Assembly: GCA_900088475.1 (NCBI GenBank) | Contig: FLMG01000658.1 | Location: forward strand, 1-64,000 | Reading direction: 5' to 3' | Length of the DNA stretch: 64,000 bases | DNA from: Hyphochytrium catenoides | Lineage: Eukaryota > Protista > Hyphochytriomycota | In this document: positions 7,974-25,839 of the stretch, in pieces | Numbering within the stretch: the first letter of the stretch is position 1 | Layout: each line of letters starts with the position of its first letter | Program-made: the position numbers and the translations under genes | Notes under the pieces: model-generated | Databases searched by the model: none | What the model saw: only the letters and a program-made list of their open reading frames with translations | Told to the model about the DNA's origin: nothing

Positions 7974-9679
7974 CTAGCGATGGCCATCGTGCTGGTTTGC
8001 CTTCAATGTGTTAGTGACGACGCCCAGGTGGATAATCCTGTCCCCAGCCTGCACGACAGGATTCACGTTCTTTCCAATGACAATTCCGTCTTCTGGAGCA
8101 AAGTAGTCCCTAACATGATCGCCTAGTAGAGAGAATGGTGAACATAAGGTAGTGACACATCATAGGCTGGGAAAATCCCTTACCGAAGACATCATGGACT
8201 GTTGCTATCTTGTCGCCCTTCCTCACCCACGTGTTGACCTCTGCAGTGTAGAGGTGGTAGAAATGAGACGGGAATGGCTTTAGTAACAGAGACATATACT
8301 TGGCGTGCTAACGGTCATAGGAGCAAGCACTGACCTGGATGGACGACCATCAGCCCTCCAACATCTGCATAACTCCACGAAGACCGCCCACAGACCACTG
8401 GGTCCACATCTGGCGGCTCATTGGAGGCTTCGACAGAGAGCATGTTCAGATACACCATAATGTTATACACGCCGACGAGAGCGTGCCTGATGTACCGCCG
8501 CTGAAAGACTAGCGGGTTGCCAATCTCCACAGTGATGGCGGGGATTTGCAGCTTGGCGGCCGCCCCTCTGAGGGAGCCGTCCGGACTGGAGTTATGTACG
8601 ACAATCTGCGGGTTCTGTAGAAGCGCCATCCGTCTGGCCATTGGCTCCAGAAGATTTGCCCGCACATAAAGAGAGTTTACTCTTCCGTGGCTCGCAGTGT
8701 GAAGGTCAATGAGAAAGTCTAGCTTCTTGATAATCTTGTGCATGAACTGGTAGCAGTATTGATTCCCGCTATCGCCGTCTGGCTTGCCAGGGAACAATCT
8801 GTTGAGATCCTGACCGTCACTGAAGGTTCTGGTGCACCGCATAAAGCCCGGGTTATTCACCACGGGCACGAAGACCACGATGCCGTGCAGAGAGTCGACA
8901 TCCAGCTCCTTAACTAATCTGTGGATCAGCGGGATGCCATTGAGCTCATTGCCATGCACCGCTGCTGTTATGCCTAATATTGGCCCTGAGAGCATCCCTC
9001 GTGCTATGATCAGCGGGATCTTCAGGGTACGAGAGAACGCATCCATGGTAAGCGAGAGCCATAACCGGTGGATGCGGCCGGGAAGGAGATCAGAAAACTC
9101 CACAGTGTCCAACAGCACGCGCTTGTCTGTCTCCTCATAATGGCTGAAGTCTGAGGGCCTTCGAACCATTGGCCTCTTTTTCTCAAGCATTGAGCCCAAC
9201 ACGTTTAGCACATTCATGCCCTCCGTCGTATCTTGAAAGCGAGCGTTGTCAACCTTGGATGCCCAAGCCAGCACGTTAACATTCACACCTGCGCCTCCAG
9301 CCTCTCCCAGCCACCGTTGCCACTTCTTCAGGATCTTACCAAAGGCAACTTTATTGACAGTGGCATAGTCAAAGAGCCGCATAATCCTCTCACGGAAGTT
9401 CAGCAGCGTCAGTCTGTCATGCTTCTTCTCTTCAGCGAGCTTGTGGCCCTCGTCCACTAACTTCTTGATCTCTACCGTGTAAAAGTCATCAACCCTTCTT
9501 ACGTCTTCCTCAATAATGGCTTCAAACTTCAGAACCGTATCGCTAATAGTCTCAGGAGGCGGATGCTCCTCGGCAGAAGTTCCAGCTTGCCGGATTAAGT
9601 TCTTGAGCTCTTCATACCGCACGTACTGATCCTTCCATTCAGGCACCATGCGCACAAGCATCTGCTTGGAAAACTTCAT
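7974..9679 (-). CDS. SPX domain fused to succinylglutamate desuccinylase/aspartoacylase-family (AstE/AspA, M14 Zn) hydrolase; 3 exons (9679-8335, 8240-8184, 8122-7974), 516 aa
   Basis: SPX N-terminus MKFSKQM..VPEWKDQYVRYEELK and NKVAFGKILKK; hydrolase motifs AAVHGNELNG, DLNRLFPG, LIDLHTAS, ITVEIG. GT-AG splicing restores the family C-terminus VHPEVNTWVRKGDKIATVHDVFGDHVRDYFAPEDGIVIGKNVNPVVQAGDRIIHLG. Confidence 0.93.
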
Positions 9680-12065: not shown

Positions 12066-13082
12066 ATGGGAGTTCTTAAAGATGGGAGAGTGGCGTTGGG
12101 GCTCCTACCTACCTTGGCTGTCAAGAATGAGAGTCAACCAGAGGATGCGGAACTGGGGTCAACGCCATCCGCATCCGGAGACTGGCAGGATCTAGAAAGT
12201 TATTGCATTATTGATCAGCAAACTGTCTCTTGTGCCAGTCAGGACGTGATTCGCCTTGATGACCAGCTGTCGCCAAATGTGATGGTAGATGAAGCAGAGC
12301 GATCTCTCGAGGTCAAGGTCCCGGACGTCATTGTCGACAAGTCAGTGCCCGCATCTACAGCAGTTTCGACAGTGAAGAGACCGAGCAAGGTGCACTGGGT
12401 GGATAGGACCATCTTATGGCTTAAGTTATTAGCGGGGACCTTATACATCGTTGGCTCCATTGGATATTATCCGCAGCTCAACCCAGATGGCTCTGTCTTA
12501 GGCTACCGAATAGGTCGATGGAGCTATTGCACAGGTTCTACGATTCTCTTTATGTGTGGCACGCGAGGGTTTGCCAAACATTTGATTGCCAAAGCGCTGA
12601 TCACAAATGTCAAGGTTCAGAAACAGAAGAAGCATACCTTCGCACGCTGGAGTAGCATACTACGAGCCATGTTGTCAGACTTTCTCTGTTGGATATATCT
12701 CTTCTCTTTAGGTGCATCAGGATTTTATCTTCTTGGTATTGGCTTCTACTCTGCTGGACAATCGCCGGCTGGGACGTGGGCTTTCATTGTAGGAAGCATC
12801 TCTTACGTCATGTGCGGAGTAGTGGAAGGCATGCAGATATTGCTGGGATGGAAAGCGGGCGAAGAAAGTGTAGCCACCCAATGGCGTCGGAAGCTCGCGC
12901 ACGGATTGTCAGACGTAGCTGCGGGCTGTCTGTTCTTACTTGGGAGTGTCTATTTGTTGCCCTCGTACTTTGCGTCCCCCGGAGGTGCCTTGATGGTCGC
13001 GAATGGGTTCCTGATTGGCTCCGTGATGTACTTTCTCACTGTGTGCGACCATATGTATCTATTATATAAAGCACAGGGCTAA
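12066..13082 (+). CDS. Multi-pass membrane protein with about three YrhK-like helical-hairpin repeats, 338 aa
   Basis: Repeated motifs GTLYIVGSIGYYP..GRWSYCTGST, GFYLLGIGFY..GTWAFIVGSISY, GCLFLLGSVYLLP..ANGFLIGSVMY; intronless ORF. Confidence 0.75.
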   Translation: MGVLKDGRVALGLLPTLAVKNESQPEDAELGSTPSASGDWQDLESYCIIDQQTVSCASQDVIRLDDQLSPNVMVDEAERSLEVKVPDVIVDKSVPASTAVSTVKRPSKVHWVDRTILWLKLLAGTLYIVGSIGYYPQLNPDGSVLGYRIGRWSYCTGSTILFMCGTRGFAKHLIAKALITNVKVQKQKKHTFARWSSILRAMLSDFLCWIYLFSLGASGFYLLGIGFYSAGQSPAGTWAFIVGSISYVMCGVVEGMQILLGWKAGEESVATQWRRKLAHGLSDVAAGCLFLLGSVYLLPSYFASPGGALMVANGFLIGSVMYFLTVCDHMYLLYKAQG

Positions 13083-13143: not shown

Positions 13144-14317
13144 TTAAACTTCCGCCTGACTGGCAAGCAGCTGGTTGTCTGTCAGACAGAGAAGCATCCA
13201 GTGTGGTGAGGGGCTAATTGATGCGCAGCATGCCAATAATAGCTGGTGACTTACACTGGCAGAGTCGTAGCTTGAGCAGGAGGTTCTTTTCGTCTCGGAG
13301 CTGCTTCTTCTCCTCGTAGCAGGATTTCACACGGTCCCACCAGCGCTTACGGCCAATTTTGTCGCCATTTGCATTGCATTCCTCAGCCTTTGTCTGTGCC
13401 ATCAATATTTGAGCCTCGAGTGCGTCGATATCCTTCTGCAACTTGTCTAGCTGCTGGTCAATAGATGGCGCCTCGAACGCTTGGACTACCTGCTACTCAA
13501 ACGTATTGAACTTACTACGGACATGGTAAGAAAAGAACCCCTCATTCACACGTACCGTGGAATTAGCGCCATCTCCGCCATTGGCATGATCTTCTGAGCG
13601 CCTCACTGCAGCAGAGGGTAGAGGCGGCAACGGGATGCTAGGATCCATGTCATGCAAGAGAAGACTGCTGCGATATTTGGCAGCCCTCTTCTTATGCTTG
13701 TGGGTGGAAAGCACATGTCGCTCGACAAAGCACTTCTCAGGCTTGGATATCCTGATGTTACATGCTTTGCACCAGATGTTCCGATTATCGTCCTCTCTGA
13801 TGTAGAGCAGCTTGTCTGGGCCGCCATATCGTTCTACGAGCTCAGTCCGCGTCGTTCTGCGCGCTCTGACGAGCTTGGTGTTACTGAGATGCTTCTGCGT
13901 CTGGACATGCCTCTGCACGAAAGACTTTTCAGGCTTTGTGATTCTGATGTCGCAGGCACGACACCAGATATTCCGGTTGTCTCGGACGTTTATGTATAAG
14001 TACTTCTCCTGTCCGCCGAATGTTGTCACAAGCATCTCGCGCGTAAAGTACACGCGCTGTGGCTTCTCCTCTGGCGCTGTCTGCTCTGCTGCTGTCACAG
14101 GTGTAGCAGAATTAGAGGTATCGTTCGGAGCTGCTGGAGGGTCCTCCGGAGCTGGTCGTTTGACCAGCACGCTACTTGTGTTCTCCGGTCCCTCTTCTCC
14201 TCCTTCCTGCCCAGTGCCGGGTGCTTTGGTCGCCTTTTTGTTCACCTTTGGGGATGCCCGCTTCTTCTTGATTGCCAGCTTTTGCGGCTCGCCTTCCTTC
14301 GGCGGTGTAGGGGACAT
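13144..14317 (-). CDS. Protein with two tandem CGGBP1/BED-like C2H2 zinc fingers and a C-terminal coiled coil; 3 exons (14317-13556, 13489-13255, 13178-13144), 343 aa
   Basis: Fingers NIWCRACDIRITKPEKSFVQRHVQTQKH and NIWCKACNIRISKPEKCFVERHVLSTHKH; two GT-AG introns join the ORF in frame to the 13214-13441 ORF (EEKKQLRDEKNLLL) and a short last exon. The start codon is uncertain. Confidence 0.8.
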
Positions 14318-17401: not shown

Positions 17402-20400
17402 ATGGGCGTTCGAGGGCTGCAAAAGTTTCTCCTACGACAGACGAAAGCTCTTCACAGGAAGAAACATGGACAACAGGTACCGTTCTTCGACACATTCTCC
17501 TTAACGTTGGCCTTGCCATCCCCGCGATTGACCTTTCATGCCGTCTCTTGCCAGGACAATGGCTTAAGTTCGCCAACCACTAGAGAGGATGAGTACAGCA
17601 AAGGAGGAGAAGACGTCGGCCACAACGGGAAAGAAGGAGAAGGACCTCAACCACGCCGTGCGACAGGTAAACCGTCCATTTGCAAGAATGTGATTGTGGA
17701 GGAGCAATGCTCTAACAATGGAGTTCTTCAGCAAATCCTCCGTTAGATGCTGGAGCGGTTAACTATCGATGCGGGGAGCCCAAATTCATACCGAGAAACT
17801 CCAGGCTGTATGTTGACGCCTTGGGGTTCCTCTACCATCTGTTCGGCAAACAAGAGGAGGAGGAGTCGCGGAGGAGACGCGAGACTCTAATTGCTGATCC
17901 TCCATCATCCCAAAAAGGCTTGGGAGAAGATGCCTCCTTCTTTGGATATTCAACTCGCCGAGAGTACGGTGGCTCTTACAGAGCATTCGATAGCTTTGCG
18001 CGCCGAGAGATCCGGCGTTTACAATCGCTTGGGGTCTTCGAGAGCATTCTCTTCTACTTTGACGGGATGATGCTCCAGGCAAAGCATGCAACGCACGAGG
18101 AGCGCGCTCTGCAGAAAGAGCAGAGGTGGAGCAACCTCTATCGATATTTCTGCGGCCGAACTTCTGCCCCACCTGCTCAGGAAGATATTCCAATGCCTCC
18201 TTTGATCTATGAACAGTTTCTCCGAACGCTAGAAGCAATCACGCATGAGGAAATCGACCTTGAAGACCAACTGTCTCGACTCTCCATCAGCCACGCCACG
18301 GGCGGCGAAGAAGGTGAAGGAAAACTGTCCCCATCTTCTCCCCGTTCTTCCACGAAAATCTGTATCGTACACTGTACTGTTGAGGCTGATGTTGAGATCG
18401 CTCGAGATGTAGAGAACTGGAATAAACAATCCTTCCCTTCTTCATCTGAACCATCATCCCGTTGTGGCCAAGCTTACTGCTACGGAGAGGACAGTGACTA
18501 CCTGCTGATGAGAGGCTGTCCGTACATAAGATTTGGTCACATTTCAGGGCATCATCAGCCACCACCCTCCTCGGGCAACCATTCAACCAACGCAACGTCT
18601 GATAACAGTAATCAGCCTGATGGAGTTGTGGCACGAGAGGTATGGAGAAGAGAGGAGGTGGCAGCGATGCTTAGTTTGACGGAGTCGCAACTGGTCGAGT
18701 GGGGCATCCTTCTTGGCAACGACTACACGAAGGAATATTCACGGTCTGAGTTCAAAGTCCGAAAGAGTCTGCCGCAAGGGTTAGCTCATCGTAACTCAAA
18801 TGTCGAATCAGAGGGGGCTGGAGATGTAGCCATCCAGCTGAACAATGACTCAAGTTATACAATTCAGGAGATGCTTTCCATAGTTCGGGAGGGCGGCGAC
18901 TCGTTCCAACTGACATCAGACAACCCTGAAGTGCAAGCTGCAATAGCTCTCTCCAGAGCCATCTACGAGCACCAAGACAGCCAGTGGTCCTTGATTATGC
19001 AAGAGCTCAAAAAGGCTCAGCATCTAAACCATGACGAGAAGGACCTCCCGTCGCCCTTACCGGGGCAGAATCACGTATCTACCGTAGCCAAGAGCCAAGA
19101 TAATGGCGAAGAGGAAGAAGAAATCTCCTCATCCATGTTCGCTCTGACGTCCAACCAACGACAGTGTCTCGAGTCCTGGGCAAAAGATGTCGCTTGGAAA
19201 CAGATAGCCATGACCCAAGGCGTCGCCTGGGCGGTGCTCCATCAACTGGCGAAAGCGTCAAACTCAACTGATGAAGCGAAGAGCTCGACAGCGTTTTCGT
19301 CAGTCTTTACACCCACTCATCTCGTAGCGATCGAAACGATGCTTGAGACGATACAAAGCTCACTCGTTCTTGACCCCGGGGAGAAGCTTTGCCGCTACGA
19401 TTGTGAGAGCAATGACGGAGATTCTCTCCTTCAGGACCTATTGAGCGTGACCCAGCATGCCCCTGATAAGCTTGTACGACCTACCTGGGCGGACTTCCAG
19501 GCAGCTCATACCTATCAGCTGATGCTGAGACATTTCTTCTCTTCCGCATCGACGAAGAGTCCCAGGACCAGACAAATATCCCATCCATCTGCTCCATTCA
19601 GAGATTTTTTGGGGCATCCGCAGCAGTTCTATGAAGGAGAAGTTTTCCACAAGCTCATGGCGGGGCTACACGTGAACGAAGACGACGATAAAGCCTGCGA
19701 ACAGCCAATGCCAGCTTCAGAGGAGGAAAAGCTTGTGCCAGGAGAAGCCGAGTCGCTCCCTATCGACTCCCATCGGGAAGAGATTCTACGTAAGATCCGG
19801 AGTGACCGAGTGACAATTATCCATGGCGAAACAGGATGCGGAAAGTCCAGTCGGCTTCCAGTGATGCTACTCCAAGATGCTAATGAACGCGGGGAGCGCT
19901 GCAAGATTTATATTTCACAGCCTCGACGAATAGCTGTCACAGGTCTCACCCGAAGACTACGGCCACAGCTTGGCAAACGGGTGGGCATGTTAATGGGCCA
20001 CGGGATCCGAGATGTCTTTCCTGAGACAAAAGTAATCTTCGCAACGACCGGTTACCTGGTCCGCTTGATCGCCGGCAACATCGGCGCACTGCGATCAGCC
20101 ACGCATCTAATCGTTGACGAGGTCCACGAGCGTTCAATTGATAGCGATGTAATCTGCCTACTATGCAAGCGCATACTCCAAGACCTGCCACATATCAAGA
20201 TTGTACTAATGAGCGCCACGATTCACACCGAACTCTACAGAGAGTACTTCTTGGGCAGGAATCGTGGAGCTCGGTCTACCTCTCTTAAAGTGGCAGACGC
20301 CAACAGTGAAGGTGACGGCTACCCTGATATTATGGTTGACCACTCCGAGGACTCATTAGAGGATGATCAAGACGAGTACCCAGGCAGTGAAGCCTATGGC

Positions 20401-23400
20401 GACATGAAGTGTTTATCAGTCGGAGTGAAGCGCTTTCCGCTCAACATTCTGGTAAGAGTCTTGTCCTCCTAGGTCCCCTGCTTTTGCTGTTCCTGCTAGC
20501 TCTTGCTTACTTACTTTTACTGATAGTACGCCAGAGACATTGCGAGCAAGATCTTCCATGAGAATGTGGTGGTGAAGCAGCTCTGCACCAGCATTGAAAC
20601 ACAGACAGCAAAAGCTTCCATGACGGCCATTCCGAGTGACGCCATCGCGAAGCATCAGCTTCGAGTTGCGGAAGAGCTGATTAGGAGTCACATTGCCATT
20701 GGCAGTGGAGTCCTGGTGTTCCTCCCAGGTCTCACTTCTATTACGGAGCTCTGGGACCTCTTAGAAGCCGACTCACGATTTAGCTTATCCGTCGTCCACT
20801 CAGACGTACCATTCGAAGAACAAGTAGACATATTTTCGGCCGTCCCAGAGGGAAAGATCAAGGTTGTTCTGGCAACAAATGCTGCAGAGAGCTCCATCAC
20901 AATCCCAGATGTTGACTATGTCATATGTCTTGGCAGGGGTCGAGCGATGTGCTATAACAAAGCCTCGCACCAGAGCGTCCTAACAGACATCTGGATCTCA
21001 AAAGCATCCGCGACGCAGAGGGCGGGCCGCACAGGACGAGTGCGGCCCGGGACGGTTTTCCGCCTTTATAGTGAGAGCTTGGAAAAAAAATTTCAAGAGC
21101 ATGACACTCCCGAAGTGCTTCGGACGACTCTCGAAGATGTCATTCTTCAACTGTTGACCATGTTGGAGCACGCCGACGGCTTCGGAGGTGTCTTTCCCAT
21201 ATTAACCCAGCTCATCCAGCCTCCAGATCTCAGCAACGTGAGCAGAAGTTTGGAGCGCCTCACGAAACTCGATCTCATAGATGAGTCGGAGAATCTTACC
21301 TCCAGTGGGAGGTTTGCGGGGCAGATGCCTGTATCCCTGGAGCTCTCTCGCTTACTCCTCTTCGGTATTGTCCTTGGCATCCCGACGGAGGCTGTCGTCC
21401 TTGCCGCTGTACTATCCGTTGGCAAAACACCGTTCCGCATAGCCGTCCCTATGATCCACACTGATGTCAAGGAGTATAACGACATTATTCGGCAGTCGAT
21501 GACTTTCGCGGACAAGGTGGACAATGGATGCAAATCAGAACCTATTCTGTGGCTGAAACTGGTTTCAAAGTGGCTTGGCATGCCAAACGAGAGAGCTGCT
21601 ACCGCCTGGGCAGTCCGTAATGGTATTGCAGCAAAACGGCTGAAGCAGATGTCACTCGTAGCAAAGAGTTTGCGCCTCTCTGTAAGCCGCTTCCTCACCC
21701 ACAAGCCCGACGTATGGAATTGGAGAGGCTCAAGGCAACAAAAGGATGACGGAAAAGCGTATGAGACTTCCGACGATGGCTACCTAAGAGACTTCCAGTC
21801 ACTCAACAGTTTGGACGGCAAGACTTTGAACCGTCTTCGACTGATACTCACGTGGACATTCGCTGACAATCTTCTCTGTTCCAAGACCACAAACGAGATG
21901 GCAAAGTTCAGCAAGCCCTTGCAGCGGACCGCTGAGGAGAAGAAAGGACAGGAATGGACAGGATCTGCATGTCAGTTGAACCTCACTAATGCGGCCGTGT
22001 CTCTAGAGCATCTGGCAACTCTCCTTCCTGAGAGCCACCCAGGCGACTACGGGAGCTATAATGGCTGGAAACTGGAGAGAAATGTACACCGCCTGCATAC
22101 TGCCTATCTGTTCAAAACCAATCTGGACCACATTTTAGCTGATCTTTGGTCAGTATGCAGTGAGTTAGGAATAGTAATGTTCTGGGTCATGATGGACGTA
22201 CAGGATGTATCTGTGGGCGAGAAGGAGGATCACAAGGGAGAGAGCAAAAAGAAGAAGGCAAAGAACAAGGAGCTCAAAGGAGCCGCCCGCAGGACTGAAC
22301 TACGACTTGTCATCTCAAGAGAAGTTGCAATGGAGACCCTGCTCGGTTCTTCAGAAAGTTTGGAGGCACGCAAACGTGAAGGTTTGGAAAGAGGAGGGGG
22401 AAGTGAGCCCAAAGTAGATCAAGATACTTCCCTCATCCGTGCAGTCTTCGCAACCTTAGCAGCGAAATTGAAATTGAGTGAGACCGTCCCGCGGCTGCTC
22501 CCCACCAAGCAAGGCTATGAGCCATTCAAACCTAAGTCCTTCACTACAAACTCAACCCAATACATAGTCTTCTCAGGTACCGGCTCAATCATGCTGAGCA
22601 AACATGTGCAGCTTTTGAAGGCTCTGAGTTCAAAGTTGCCCTCCTCGATCGCCCTCAAGATACCTACGAACGGGAAAGCGCAGTTGATCTGCACAAATGC
22701 TCATGGGATCACAGAGGACATGCTCCGGAGAATATTTTTCTTTCAAGGGGTAGAGAAACGACAGAAGGGAGAAGCTAACTCGGCCCAGAGCCTCCTGCAA
22801 AGTCTAGGAACTAGCGACGATCTCTACGACGACACAGCATTGTTTTTGGGGAAGGACACTATGATCGACTCTGTTACTATGTCAAAGTCCAGCGTGTTAG
22901 CTATCGCTTACAGAGCTCCCAAAAGGGTTGGCGTTGGGGTTGATGGAACATATCCTCTTGTACACGATGCCCCTCTCAGTTGTCGGCTGATCTGGTCTTG
23001 CATGACTAGGAACCTTAGGCGAGAATGTCGGAAATTGAGACTGCCAGCTCTAGAGAAAGAAGCCTATGATGACACACTCAAGTCTCCAGCAAGGAAAGAG
23101 TGCGGAAGAGCTGCTGAAGCGAAGCGGAGTTGTTCTGATATGGAAGTAAAGGTTGAGAGCGCCTCAACACGCTCGACGCCAGATATATCGACGGGGGTTG
23201 CTCCGGCTTCCCTGACATGGCGGCATCTGGGAGGAATCACATCCTGTGATCCACCAGTTCTCAAAGCCTGTAGCATCTCCCGCAACTCTTTCTGTAGTGT
23301 ATCAGTCCACCTAGGCAGGGGGCCAGTCTTTGCAGTGGGCACGTCCTCCTTGATTTTTCAGGGAGGAGGACTCATGTTTGGTGAAGGCATTACGCTTCTT

Positions 23401-25839
23401 CCCCCAGGTTGTCGGTGGCTATCACTGGCGCTGCTGTGCCTGGGTACACAGGAGCTACATCACACGCTCCTGATACCAGGGTGCGCTGGAGTGAAGCAGG
23501 TAGATGACGCGGAAGAATCGTTCCGTGATGGGGTGTTTGACTCTCCTCTCAATGAAGATGACCTCAGCCTCTGCAACCAAGTGAAAGAGATTCTCTTACA
23601 TGCGTTCCCCTCGACGACAGAGGCACGCACTTTCACACGGAATGCAGCTCTGATCGATAGAATCGAGAAGCTCTTCGAGACATGGGAAGATTCCTATGGT
23701 TACGGACAGACCGCCGCAGTACCTGATCAGGAAAATGATGGAGAAGAAGAAATGCATGAGGAACGGCCCCTAGCGGCAGAGGAGAGTCAACCGTTGCAGT
23801 CCCAGAGAAATAATAACAGAGCAACCGCTACCGCACAAGTGACCACAGACGCTTGTCCAGTCGCTGCTCCCTTTCCTCACAGAGGGAACGATAACGTTAT
23901 TGAGCATGTACTGCCCACTGGTGACGGCTTGAAGCGTTGCCCGCTCTGTTCAGAGAGCTGTTCGAACATCTCACTACTTCTAAAGCACATGGAGGACAAA
24001 TCCACTCATGGTCTGGGGAAGGGCCAAATTGCAATAGCTCTGTATGGATCATTGACCAAATGCTCATTCTGTCCGTCCACAAAGCAGAAAGTGTACCTCC
24101 AGCCTTTGCAGCTACTGAATCATCTGACTAGTGCAGTCCACGCAATACCCCTGGCCGAAGCAAAAGAGAGTGTCGCTAATATCCTTTCCTTGAAGTCTGG
24201 CACCGCTGCAGAACGGCCGGTGCAAGCTATATATCATTCCAATGCCGGAGAAGGGACGCAGAAGACTGTTGCTGTCAGCGAAACCAAAGCTCTGGTAGCA
24301 CCTGTGACGAGAATGGCGGGTCCAGCTGTTGCACTTGCTCTAAGACAACAGCAGCCCTCAGCAACTGCTCGCCCTCATAGCGTGGGGAGGGATAACGTTA
24401 ATGAGCCTGTACTGCCCACTGCTGGAGTCCTGAAGCGGTGTCCACTCTGTTCACTGAGTTTTTCGACCATCTCACCCCTCGTAAAGCACATGAAGGACAA
24501 ATCCATTCATGGTCTGAAGAAGAGACAGGTTGCAATAGCTCTATATGGCTCACTGACCAAATGCCCAATCTGCCCCTCCACGAAGACGAAAGTGTACCTC
24601 AAACCGTTGCTGCTCCTGAATCATCTGACCAGTGCAAAGAACCATGGGATGCCCCTATGTGAAGCAGAAGGTATCGTCGCTAAGGTTCTTTCGTGTGCAA
24701 CGGCTGCAGAACTGCCAGCGCAGCCTACACAGCTGCAAGCAGGTGAAGGCATACAGCGTATTCCTGCGCTCAGCAAAAAGGAAGCACAACAACTAACCAC
24801 ACCAATTACAGCGAACGCGACTCCTACTCCTCAGTACGATCAGTCTCCAGCGCCTGTGGTCTCTGAAGGAGGGCGGGATCAGGTTATTGAACCTGTACTG
24901 CCCACTGCTGAAGGACAGAAGCGGTGCCCCCTCTGCTCAGAGAGCTATTCCACCATCTCGCTACTTCTAAGGCACATGAAGGACAAATCCACTCATGGTC
25001 TGAAGAAGGGTCAGATTGCGATAGCTCTGTATGGATCCTTGACCAGATGCCCAGTCTGCCCGTCAACGAAGACGAAAGTGTACCTCCAGCCTTTGCGGCT
25101 CTTGAGTCATCTGACCAGTGCAAAACACGGAACGACCGCCAGCGAAGCCGAAGGTATCGTTGCTAAGGTTCTCTCCATGGATTCCGCGCAAACGGCAAAG
25201 GCCCCATCATATATTCAGCCAGCAGGTGGAGAAGAAGAGACCCATGGAGCGGCAAATGGAGATCGGCCAGCTCCCTCCCACGTGAAAGACCCGGCACCTA
25301 TAAACGAGGAATTTTCTAACATTAAAATGCTGTTGGAGCACACGATAGATACTCATCGCATCGAACCCCAGACCGCCGCTATACTTCTATTTGGAGCATT
25401 GACTCGATGCCCTGTTTGTCCTTTGGCGAAGCAGGAGATATATCCGTCCCCTGAGAATCTCTTCGCTCATCTCCAAAGCTCAGCCCACGACCTGGCACGT
25501 GAAGAAGCCAAAGTAATGGCCCTGAAGGTCTTTTCCCTCTTACATTTGCGGACGGAGACTAAGTCACATGACTTAACTCTCTCTGCATCATCACTACCGC
25601 GGACGATACCTGCAACTACTCTGGCCTGTCCCTTCTGTCCATGGAAGACAGCCCGAAGAGACAGCCCAGCAACCAAAGTGCTGGGCACCATAAGCTGTCC
25701 CCGTTGCAGCAGCAAGGCGAAGAAGAAACTATACCGGGCACCCTACAGCCTCTCTTCGCACCTGCAGAGTGGGGTTCACAAGCTGCCAATGGACGAAGCG
25801 GATCGTATTGCGCAGGAAATGTTCTCTCCGTATCAATAG
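17402..25839 (+). CDS. Asteroid/FAM120-like PIN (FEN1/XPG family) nuclease + DExH/RHA RNA helicase + HA2-like region + C2H2 zinc-finger repeat array; exons 17402-17476, 17555-17666, 17732-20451, 20527-25839; ~2,739 aa
   Basis: PIN motifs MGVRGLQKFL, LYVDA, YGGSY, YFDG, EAD, EDSD, LLGNDY. Helicase motifs GETGCGKS, SQPRRIA, TTGYL, DEVH, MSAT, VFLPG, ATNAAESSITIPDV, QRAGRTGRV. Introns 17667-17731 and 20452-20526 are canonical GT-AG and join the three ORFs in frame (RFPLNIL|YARDIA); the in-frame intron 17477-17554 is probable. Confidence 0.9.
23890..25176 (+). repeat. Three ~300-bp coding repeats (starts 23890, 24391, 24877), each encoding two C2H2 fingers; two more degenerate copies follow to ~25830
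   Basis: Near-identical DNA and peptide units PVLPT..KRCPLCS..KHMKDKSTHGLKK.Q.AIALYGSLT.CP.CPSTK.KVYL.PL.LL.HLTSA..H. Confidence 0.95.

What the first reader, a model, noticed from the sequence alone, without database searches (positions are those of the whole stretch)
17402..25839. Giant single-chain nuclease-helicase-zinc finger protein: PIN (Asteroid/FAM120 type) + DExH/RHA helicase + putative dsRNA-binding finger array
Seen: three separate ORFs join through canonical introns into one ~2,740-aa frame. All FEN1/XPG-type acidic positions are present (VD, FDG, EAD, EDSD, GND), as are helicase motifs I-VI. Established: Asteroid/FAM120 proteins are normally stand-alone PIN proteins. DEAH/RHA helicases (DHX36/57, TDRD9/spindle-E) are 3'-5' RNA translocases and do not normally carry an N-terminal FEN-like nuclease. 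Inference: this is a self-contained bind-unwind-cut enzyme, plausibly for RNA silencing or anti-viral/anti-transposon defence. I know of no characterised protein with this architecture. It is the best candidate for an undescribed system in the window.
Basis: partly seen in the sequence, partly recalled or inferred. Interest (0 to 1): 0.85.

Follow-up and report, generated by a model that had tools for sequence, protein, structure and literature searches.

The report
Flap-nuclease fused to RNA helicase
A chytrid-fungus gene encodes one giant protein that joins an apparently active flap-type nuclease to an RNA-helicase motor and a zinc-finger tail; it belongs to a widespread family in chytrids and diatom-like algae that I found described in no paper.

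Summary
Three + strand ORFs join through GT..AG introns (17667-17731, 20452-20526) into one 2,765-aa reading frame. It would be 2,739 aa if 17477-17554 is also an intron. The gene is colinear with Spizellomyces punctatus SPPG_08391, which has its ORF break at the same place.

- **Nuclease:** the N-terminus is a FEN/XPG-superfamily 5'-nuclease. Seven acidic residues and the gateway Lys/Arg are 95-100% conserved over 219 domain hits. Both the family profile and the AF2 model match FEN1, Rad2, EXO1 and XRN1/2.
- **Helicase:** it is DExH/RHA-type with motifs I-VI and a winged-helix/ratchet/OB module. The closest solved relatives are DHX29, DHX36, DHX9 and Spindle-E.
- **C-terminal half:** a conserved 520-aa extension of unknown fold is followed by eight C2H2-type fingers.

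The fusion is not unique. Most full-length relatives, from chytrids, diatoms, pelagophytes and chrysophytes, start with the XPG signature, and PIN-bearing members fill every clade of the helicase tree. I found no paper describing the architecture.

The "Asteroid/FAM120" label and the "dsRNA-binding" fingers are only weakly supported. A role in silencing or defence is untested.

Most likely mechanism (inferred): the 3'-to-5' motor peels a duplex and feeds the displaced 5' end to the nuclease.

The parts
17402..17666 (+). Exon 1. It starts with MGVRGLQKFL, the N-terminal signature of XPG/FEN nucleases. It may contain a further in-frame intron at 17477-17554.
   Evidence: the same N-terminus is seen in P0001 and in most full-length relatives
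17667..17731 (+). Intron 1 (65 nt, GT..AG, with a CTAAC branch-point-like motif).
   Evidence: removing it restores the reading frame
17732..20451 (+). Exon 2: rest of the nuclease domain, helical linker domain, and helicase RecA1.
17402..18762 (+). FEN/XPG-superfamily 5'-nuclease domain (interrupted by intron 1). Catalytic residues, in exon 2 numbering: D28, D110, E217, D219, D253, D255, D330, plus gateway K117 and R124.
18859..19692 (+). Conserved all-helical linker domain of unknown fold (exon 2 aa 376-653).
   Evidence: only the FEN part was matched in the fold search
19735..20451 (+). Helicase RecA1 (motifs I, Ia, Ib, II = DEVH, III), followed by an acidic insertion.
20452..20526 (+). Intron 2 (75 nt, GT..AG, four in-frame stops). 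Its position is shared with S. punctatus.
20527..25839 (+). Exon 3, including the stop codon.
20638..22116 (+). Helicase RecA2 (motifs IV-VI, beta-hairpin) and the winged-helix/ratchet/OB module.
22114..23691 (+). Family-specific, beta-rich C-terminal extension (conserved LPPG motif). It has no detectable relatives.
23938..25779 (+). Zinc-finger array. Three full ~100-aa units each hold CX2CX12HX6H plus CX2CX16HX5-6H. A degenerate unit and a partial unit follow.

Best explanation
This is one gene of a chytrid fungus (a relative of Spizellomyces). It encodes a ~2,750-aa enzyme built from five parts: (i) a catalytically intact FEN/XPG-superfamily 5'-nuclease, (ii) a helical linker, (iii) a DExH/RHA-type 3'-to-5' helicase with its winged-helix/ratchet/OB module, (iv) a conserved extension of unknown fold, and (v) a lineage-variable C2H2 finger array. 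Shown here: the gene structure, the domain identities, the conservation of the catalytic residues, and the fact that the fusion is ancestral to a family spread over chytrids and ochrophyte algae. Inferred: RHA-type motors load on a 3' single-stranded tail and move 3'-to-5', so the complementary strand is peeled off 5' end first. That is the free 5' end or 5' flap that FEN-type nucleases thread through their helical arch. The protein would therefore unwind a duplex and cut or degrade the displaced strand in a single ATP-driven step. The fingers and the C-terminal extension would select the substrate. I think the substrate is most likely RNA-containing duplex (structured RNA, dsRNA or RNA:DNA hybrid), which would make this an RNA surveillance or decay enzyme. 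Neither the substrate nor the biological role has been tested.
For: Gene model. Nuclease: the profile of 30 family N-domains hits FEN-1 at 5.5e-12, then Rad2/XPG, GEN1 and EXO1. The AF2 model (pLDDT 76.5, pTM 0.80) matches FEN1, Rad2, EXO1 and XRN1/2 at probability 1.0. XPG_I, XPG_I_2 and XPG_N score above Pfam cut-offs in homologues. Over 219 domain hits, the seven carboxylates and the Lys/Arg that align with the conserved FDGKPPQLK / AKR residues of human FEN1 (K93 and R100 by my recollection of FEN1 numbering) are 95-100% conserved. Helicase: DEAD and Helicase_C domains. RecA1 is closest to DHX9, Spindle-E and DHX29; RecA2 is closest to DHX29, DHX36 and DHX9. Foldseek aligns 440-490 columns with DHX29, DHX36, DHX9 and MLE. 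Family: most full-length relatives start MG[IV]xG with motif I at residue 450-850. Many of the short N-domain hits are fragments that end inside motif I. PIN-bearing rows occur in every major clade of a 97-row helicase tree. RNA leaning: zf-C2H2_jaz fingers in 5 of 28 tails, an RRM domain precomputed for one related helicase listed, and RNA as the main substrate of RHA helicases (established knowledge). Precedents: PhoH2, a PIN-ATPase fusion that unwinds and cleaves RNA (PMC5499597), and YTHDC2, a DExH helicase that recruits the FEN-superfamily exoribonuclease XRN1 in trans (PMC6140455).
Against: There are no transcript data, biochemistry or genetics for any member. The nuclease is closest to DNA enzymes (FEN1, XPG, EXO1, GEN1) and keeps the GxDY H3TH motif that binds duplex DNA. 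DHX9 and DHX36 also act on DNA, G-quadruplexes and R-loops. The window's own fingers do not match the dsRNA-binding model, and fingers were detected in only 5 of 28 family tails scanned. The geometry of hand-off from motor to nuclease is untested, and no full-length model was built. About 520 conserved residues have no assignable fold.
Confidence: 0.55

Rival explanations
1. A genome-maintenance enzyme that acts on DNA structures. A DHX9/DHX36-like motor would open R-loops, G-quadruplexes or stalled-fork structures, and a FEN1/EXO1-like nuclease would remove the resulting 5' flaps or RNA strands.
For: The best profile and fold matches of the nuclease are FEN1, Rad2/XPG, GEN1 and EXO1. The H3TH GxDY motif is invariant. 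DHX36 and DHX9 are among the closest helicases. ASTE1, the characterised XPG_I_2 protein, is discussed as a DNA end-processing nuclease in the papers.
Against: RHA-type helicases are mostly RNA enzymes. JAZ-type fingers occur in some members. No PCNA-type or repair-type partner motif was identified (not specifically searched).
Confidence: 0.3
2. The nuclease-like domain is a non-catalytic nucleic-acid- or protein-binding module, as proposed for FAM120 and Mkt1-type PIN proteins. The protein would then be only a helicase.
For: The window's domain falls below every Pfam threshold. It also carries an ~80-aa low-complexity insertion after the first strand.
Against: All seven metal-binding carboxylates and the gateway Lys/Arg are 95-100% conserved across 219 domain hits. 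The model is confident in the core.
Confidence: 0.05
3. A gene-model artefact: two adjacent genes (nuclease and helicase) wrongly joined.
For: No transcript evidence is available here.
Against: The nuclease and helicase RecA1 lie in the same uninterrupted ORF, 17821-20472. The same order occurs in dozens of relatives, including the annotated S. punctatus protein.
Confidence: 0.02

Closest known systems
Spizellomyces punctatus SPPG_08391 (P0001; annotated 'uncharacterized protein' / 'ATP-dependent RNA helicase')
   Same: Colinear orthologue: 63% identity in the N-terminal part and 51% in the C-terminal part. It has the same domain order, the same intron position and the same paired-finger repeat units.
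   Different: It is 2,396 aa against ~2,750. Its three finger units are almost identical to each other (by eye), whereas the window's units are 70-78% identical and are followed by two degenerate units. The neighbouring genes are not shared.
FEN1 / XPG(Rad2) / EXO1 / GEN1 structure-specific 5'-nucleases (Pfam XPG_N, XPG_I)
   Same: Same fold, same seven carboxylates, helical-arch Lys/Arg and GxDY H3TH motif.
   Different: Those are stand-alone nucleases. Here there is an insertion after strand 1, a distinct helical domain follows, and the domain is fused to a helicase. Sequence similarity is only profile-level.
Asteroid/ASTE1 and FAM120 (Pfam XPG_I_2)
   Same: They belong to the same FEN-like group of the PIN superfamily (PMC5499597). 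XPG_I_2 scores above its cut-off in some family members.
   Different: The window does not match XPG_I_2. XPG_I matches more family members (11 against 5 of 30). Among the N-domain search hits examined, most recognisable ones were members or fragments of the fusion family.
RHA-like DExH helicases: DHX29, DHX36, DHX9/MLE, Spindle-E/TDRD9
   Same: Motifs I-VI with DEVH, the beta-hairpin, and the winged-helix/ratchet/OB module.
   Different: None of these carries a nuclease. Their N-terminal accessory domains (dsRBD, DSM, Tudor and so on) are absent here. This family adds a 520-aa extension of its own.
Functional analogues: PhoH2 (PIN + PhoH ATPase, bacteria); YTHDC2-XRN1; Dna2; WRN; Dicer; Cas3
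   Same: Each couples an NTP-driven motor to a nuclease. PhoH2 unwinds and cleaves RNA (PMC5499597). YTHDC2 is a DExH helicase that recruits the FEN-superfamily nuclease XRN1 (PMC6140455).
   Different: The domain families or the arrangement differ: VapC-type PIN with PhoH; partners in trans; PD-(D/E)XK, DnaQ, RNase III or HD nucleases. I know of none that fuses a FEN-type nuclease to a DExH/RHA helicase in one chain.

Membership tests
FEN/XPG 5'-nuclease superfamily (FEN-like group of PIN-like domains) | PIN-like alpha/beta core with N and I regions | tested here: met
   The family profile hits FEN-1 at 5.5e-12 across both regions. The AF2 model matches FEN1, Rad2, EXO1 and XRN at probability 1.0.
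FEN/XPG 5'-nuclease superfamily (FEN-like group of PIN-like domains) | Seven conserved metal-binding carboxylates | tested here: met
   D28, D110, E217, D219, D253, D255 and D330 are present in the window. They are 95-100% conserved in 219 domain hits.
FEN/XPG 5'-nuclease superfamily (FEN-like group of PIN-like domains) | Helical arch with catalytic Lys/Arg, and the H3TH GxDY motif | tested here: met
   K117 and R124 align with the conserved Lys and Arg of the FEN1 FDGKPPQLK / AKR segment and are conserved 182/187 and 184/187. Two long helices at 115-139 and 158-185 are present in the model. G328 and D330 are invariant.
FEN/XPG 5'-nuclease superfamily (FEN-like group of PIN-like domains) | Metal-dependent 5'-flap endonuclease or 5' exonuclease activity | not testable with these tools
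   Needs biochemistry.
Asteroid / XPG_I_2 (PF12813) | Match to PF12813 above its gathering score, better than to XPG_I | tested here: not met
   The window has no Pfam hit in the N-terminal part. Among the family, XPG_I matches 11 of 30 and XPG_I_2 matches 5 of 30.
DEAH/RHA helicases (SF2) | Motifs I, Ia, Ib, II (DExH), III, IV, V and VI | tested here: met
   All were located. DEAD and Helicase_C score above their cut-offs.
DEAH/RHA helicases (SF2) | C-terminal winged-helix / ratchet / OB module and the RecA2 beta-hairpin | tested here: met
   Foldseek aligns 440-490 columns with DHX29, DHX36, DHX9 and MLE. The hairpin strands are at 137-144 and 149-156. By sequence, Pfam HA2_N is only weak at 13.8 bits.
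DEAH/RHA helicases (SF2) | NTP-dependent 3'-to-5' unwinding | not testable with these tools
   Needs biochemistry.
JAZ/U1-type dsRNA-binding C2H2 fingers (PF12171) | Match to zf-C2H2_jaz; CX2CX12HX5-6H spacing | tested here: inconclusive
   The first finger of each unit has CX2CX12HX6H spacing. The window gives no PF12171 hit at E<=0.1 and no PDB relative. P0001 scores 22.2 bits against a cut-off of 22.6, and 5 of 28 homologue tails match.

The most novel reading that the evidence does not exclude
This family is an undescribed, ancient eukaryotic nucleic-acid surveillance enzyme. A DExH motor would strip dsRNA, RNA:DNA hybrids or transposon or viral replication intermediates and hand the displaced 5' end to a built-in FEN-type nuclease. 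That would be a one-protein 'unwind-and-shred' pathway, retained in chytrids and ochrophyte algae and absent from the model animals, plants and yeasts where RNA decay and silencing were worked out.
Probability: 0.3. Interest if true: 0.8.

Novelty: new variant of a known kind. Interest (0 to 1): 0.62.

Why it matters
Motor-nuclease fusions such as Dicer, Cas3, Dna2, WRN and PhoH2 have repeatedly turned out to be central players in defence, silencing or repair. A FEN-type 5'-nuclease joined in one chain to an RHA-type helicase has not, as far as I could find, been described or assayed. Yet it is conserved with an intact active site across two ecologically important groups. One is the chytrid fungi: Batrachochytrium salamandrivorans has a member, and S. 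punctatus, which I recall as genetically tractable, has the closest orthologue. The other is the diatoms and other ochrophytes. The predicted polarity match (a 3'-to-5' motor that exposes a 5' end for a 5'-nuclease) gives a concrete, testable mechanism. The 520-aa conserved extension and the helical linker are candidate new domains.

Tried and rejected
- **Pfam on the window's N-terminal part:** no hit. The domain identity had to come from the family profile, the homologues and the fold.
- **phmmer of the N-terminal part against the PDB:** nothing.
- a frame slip of mine.
- **Word-indexed search with the N-terminal part:** no hit at E<=0.001, limited by the length window and the word index.
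- **Cluster look-up of ten unnamed relatives:** no names or accessions.
- **Exact look-up of a neighbouring ORF to identify the source genome:** not on record.
- **Tandem Repeats Finder on the finger region:** nothing; the units are too diverged at the DNA level.
- **Finger tail against the PDB:** only chance-level C2H2 matches.
- **C-terminal extension profile against the PDB and Pfam:** nothing significant. The best hit was the Oxytricha telomere-binding protein alpha at E=0.023, which I do not rely on.
- **Synteny with S. punctatus:** none beyond the gene itself.
- **tRNA and Rfam scans of the window:** empty.
- **Rejected, two separate genes:** the nuclease and RecA1 share one ORF.
- **Rejected, dead nuclease:** the active site is conserved.
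- **Rejected, stand-alone Asteroid relative:** the Pfam counts and the search results argue against it.
- **Not done:** a phylogeny against named DHX families, because no reference sequences could be fetched as ids, and a full-length structure model.


Full report
**1. The observation**

On the + strand there are three long ORFs: 17402-17746, 17821-20472 and 20566-25839.
- 17667-17731 is 65 nt, cag|GTAAAC...TTCTTCAG|.
- 20452-20526 is 75 nt, ctg|GTAAGA...CTGATAG|.

The second intron carries four in-frame stops. Removing both gives an 8,298-nt CDS of 2,765 aa with one terminal stop.

An independent check comes from the closest relative, Spizellomyces punctatus SPPG_08391 (P0001, 2,396 aa).
- It aligns colinearly with 17773-25206.
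- The exon 2/3 junction reads straight through (RFPLNIL|YARDIASKIF against RFELDILYASDIAQRIF).
- The S. punctatus locus has its own ORF break at the same point, so the intron position is conserved.

A third in-frame GT..AG segment, 17477-17554 (78 nt), may also be an intron. It encodes a hydrophobic stretch with no counterpart in P0001. I could not resolve this without transcripts.

**2. Source organism**

The best hit is a chytrid protein, at 63% identity in the N-terminal part and 51% in the C-terminal part. There is no exact match in the collections. The window therefore comes from a chytrid related to, but distinct from, Spizellomyces. The neighbouring genes are not syntenic with S. punctatus.

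**3. The nuclease domain**

The window's own sequence matches no Pfam model and no PDB chain by phmmer. The family evidence is nevertheless clear.
- Homologues score above the cut-offs for XPG_I, XPG_I_2 and XPG_N.
- A profile of 30 N-domains (A1) hits archaeal and human FEN-1 at 5.5e-12 to 1e-10. It then hits Rad2/XPG, GEN1 and EXO1, with the alignment running from MGxxGL to the GxDY motif.
- An AF2 model (pLDDT 76.5, pTM 0.80) matches FEN1, Rad2, EXO1, XRN1 and XRN2 at probability 1.0.

The invariant or near-invariant columns are D28, D110, K117, R124, E217, D219, D253, D255, G328 and D330. In the printed alignment to human FEN1 they fall on the conserved catalytic positions. By my recollection of FEN1 numbering these are D34, D86, K93, R100, E158, E160, D179, D181 and D233. 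Over 219 domain hits from all fetched proteins, these columns are 95-100% conserved. This is the signature of an active FEN-superfamily 5'-nuclease with a helical arch, not of a degenerate binding module.

The 'Asteroid/FAM120' label is not supported.
- XPG_I matches 11 of 30 family members, while XPG_I_2 matches 5.
- In a search of 1.84 billion representatives, the N-domain found 175 proteins at E<=0.001. I examined those of 450 aa or more among the 150 listed.
- Among those, the recognisable ones are members of this fusion family or fragments of it. Many 'short' hits end in ...IIHGETG, that is, they are cut inside helicase motif I.

**4. The helicase**

DEAD and Helicase_C are significant, and motifs I-VI are intact with DEVH as motif II.
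- RecA1 is closest to DHX9, Spindle-E, DHX29, MLE and DHX36.
- RecA2 onward is closest to DHX29, DHX36 and DHX9.
- The spliceosomal DEAH proteins score lower in both searches.
- An AF2 model of exon 3 residues 1-1060 (pLDDT 74, pTM 0.74) aligns over 440-490 columns with DHX29, DHX36, DHX9 and MLE. That covers RecA2 with its beta-hairpin plus the winged-helix, ratchet and OB modules.

This is an RHA-like DExH helicase. Such helicases translocate 3'-to-5' on single strands (established knowledge).

**5. The rest of the protein**

- **Linker.** Between the nuclease and the helicase lies a conserved all-helical domain (exon 2 aa ~376-653). It has no match.
- **C-terminal extension.** After the OB module comes a ~520-aa beta-rich extension (window 22114-23691). 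It is conserved across the family and has an invariant LPPG-type proline. It has no Pfam or PDB relative.
- **Finger array.** The C-terminus (23938-25779) holds eight CX2C..H..H matches. These are arranged as three ~100-aa units, 70-78% identical to each other, followed by a degenerate unit and a partial unit. Each full unit has a CX2CX12HX6H finger and a CX2CX16HX5-6H finger.

The window's fingers hit only generic C2H2 models. The dsRNA-binding zf-C2H2_jaz model matches 5 of 28 homologue tails, and fingers were detected in only 5 of the 28 tails. The array is therefore a variable accessory, and 'dsRNA-binding' remains a weak inference.

**6. The family**

Of the 120 best relatives of the helicase half, most full-length ones begin MG[IV]xG[LIF] and place motif I at residue 450-850. 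Named sources include:
- Chytrids: S. punctatus and Batrachochytrium salamandrivorans.
- Diatoms: Mayamaea, Nitzschia, Cyclotella, Thalassiosira and Pseudo-nitzschia.
- Pelagophytes: Aureococcus and Aureoumbra.
- A chrysophyte.

In a 97-row maximum-likelihood tree of helicase cores, PIN-bearing rows occur in every major clade. The window pairs with Spizellomyces at 100% SH-aLRT support. Most rows without a PIN are truncated gene models. The fusion is therefore ancestral to the family and has been kept under selection. It is not a recent accident and not an annotation artefact.

**7. Mechanism**

The anatomy and the conservation described above are shown by the analyses. What follows is inferred.

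An RHA motor that loads on a 3' tail and moves 3'-to-5' displaces the complementary strand 5' end first. FEN-type nucleases act on free 5' ends or 5' flaps that thread through the helical arch. The two activities therefore have matching polarity. The simplest model is ATP-driven unwinding coupled to cleavage or 5'-to-3' degradation of the displaced strand, with the fingers and the extension providing substrate choice.

I lean towards RNA-containing duplexes, for three reasons:
- RHA helicases are mostly RNA enzymes.
- JAZ-type fingers occur in some members, and an RRM domain is listed for one related helicase.
- There are precedents: PhoH2 (PMC5499597) and the YTHDC2-XRN1 partnership (PMC6140455).

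The nuclease's closest relatives are DNA enzymes, however, and DHX9 and DHX36 also work on DNA structures. A role in R-loop, G-quadruplex or flap processing is therefore a serious rival. I put about 0.55 on the first and 0.3 on the second.

**8. Comparison and novelty**

Both domains belong to well-known families, and motor-nuclease fusions are a known kind. Full-text searches found no paper describing a FEN/XPG nuclease fused to a DExH helicase, nor any mention of the S. punctatus locus tag. The PIN-superfamily census lists no such architecture in the passages I read.

The family is already visible in public databases, labelled 'uncharacterized protein', 'HrpA-like RNA helicase' or 'RNA helicase'. 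I rate it a new variant of a known kind: real, conserved and uncharacterised, but not unique to this window.

**9. Verdict**

The architecture and the intact active sites hold. The Asteroid type, the dsRNA fingers and the defence role are not established.
- Interest is about 0.6.

Noticed in passing
window 17477-17554: A possible third intron inside exon 1: 78 nt, in frame, with ends cag|GTACCG..TTGCCAG|. It encodes a hydrophobic stretch (VPFFDTFSLTLALPSPRLTFHAVSCQ) that has no counterpart in the S. punctatus orthologue, whose insert here is hydrophilic.
   Followed up: partly
window 8318-9679 (-): A 454-aa ATG ORF combines an N-terminal SPX domain (1.1e-12) with a succinylglutamate desuccinylase/aspartoacylase catalytic domain (1.1e-37). 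This is a phosphate-sensing domain joined to a zinc carboxypeptidase-like hydrolase. There is no exact match in the gene collection.
   Followed up: no
window 12066-13079 (+) and 13496-14317 (-): An ORF with a YrhK-like membrane domain (1.4e-09), and an ORF with a weak C2H2 finger match (5.8e-04, below cut-off).
   Followed up: no
proteins P0122, P0136, P0137, P0143, P0147, P0149, P0170, P0260: Many metagenomic fragments of the family end at exactly ...IIHGETG, inside helicase motif I. This suggests a conserved intron within the P-loop codons in other lineages. The window has no intron there.
   Followed up: no
L001 16378-17322 (S. punctatus) against window 23938-25130: The three finger units of the S. 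punctatus protein are almost identical to each other (by eye), while the window's are 70-78% identical. This points to recent unit duplication or concerted evolution in S. punctatus.
   Followed up: partly
window 22114-23691: The profile of the conserved C-terminal extension gives a sub-threshold hit (E=0.023) to the OB-fold telomere end-binding protein alpha of Oxytricha. It may hint at extra OB folds, but it is not reliable.
   Followed up: partly
window 1-64000: No tRNA genes and no Rfam family at gathering score anywhere in the 64 kb. GC content is an even 47-52%.
   Followed up: yes
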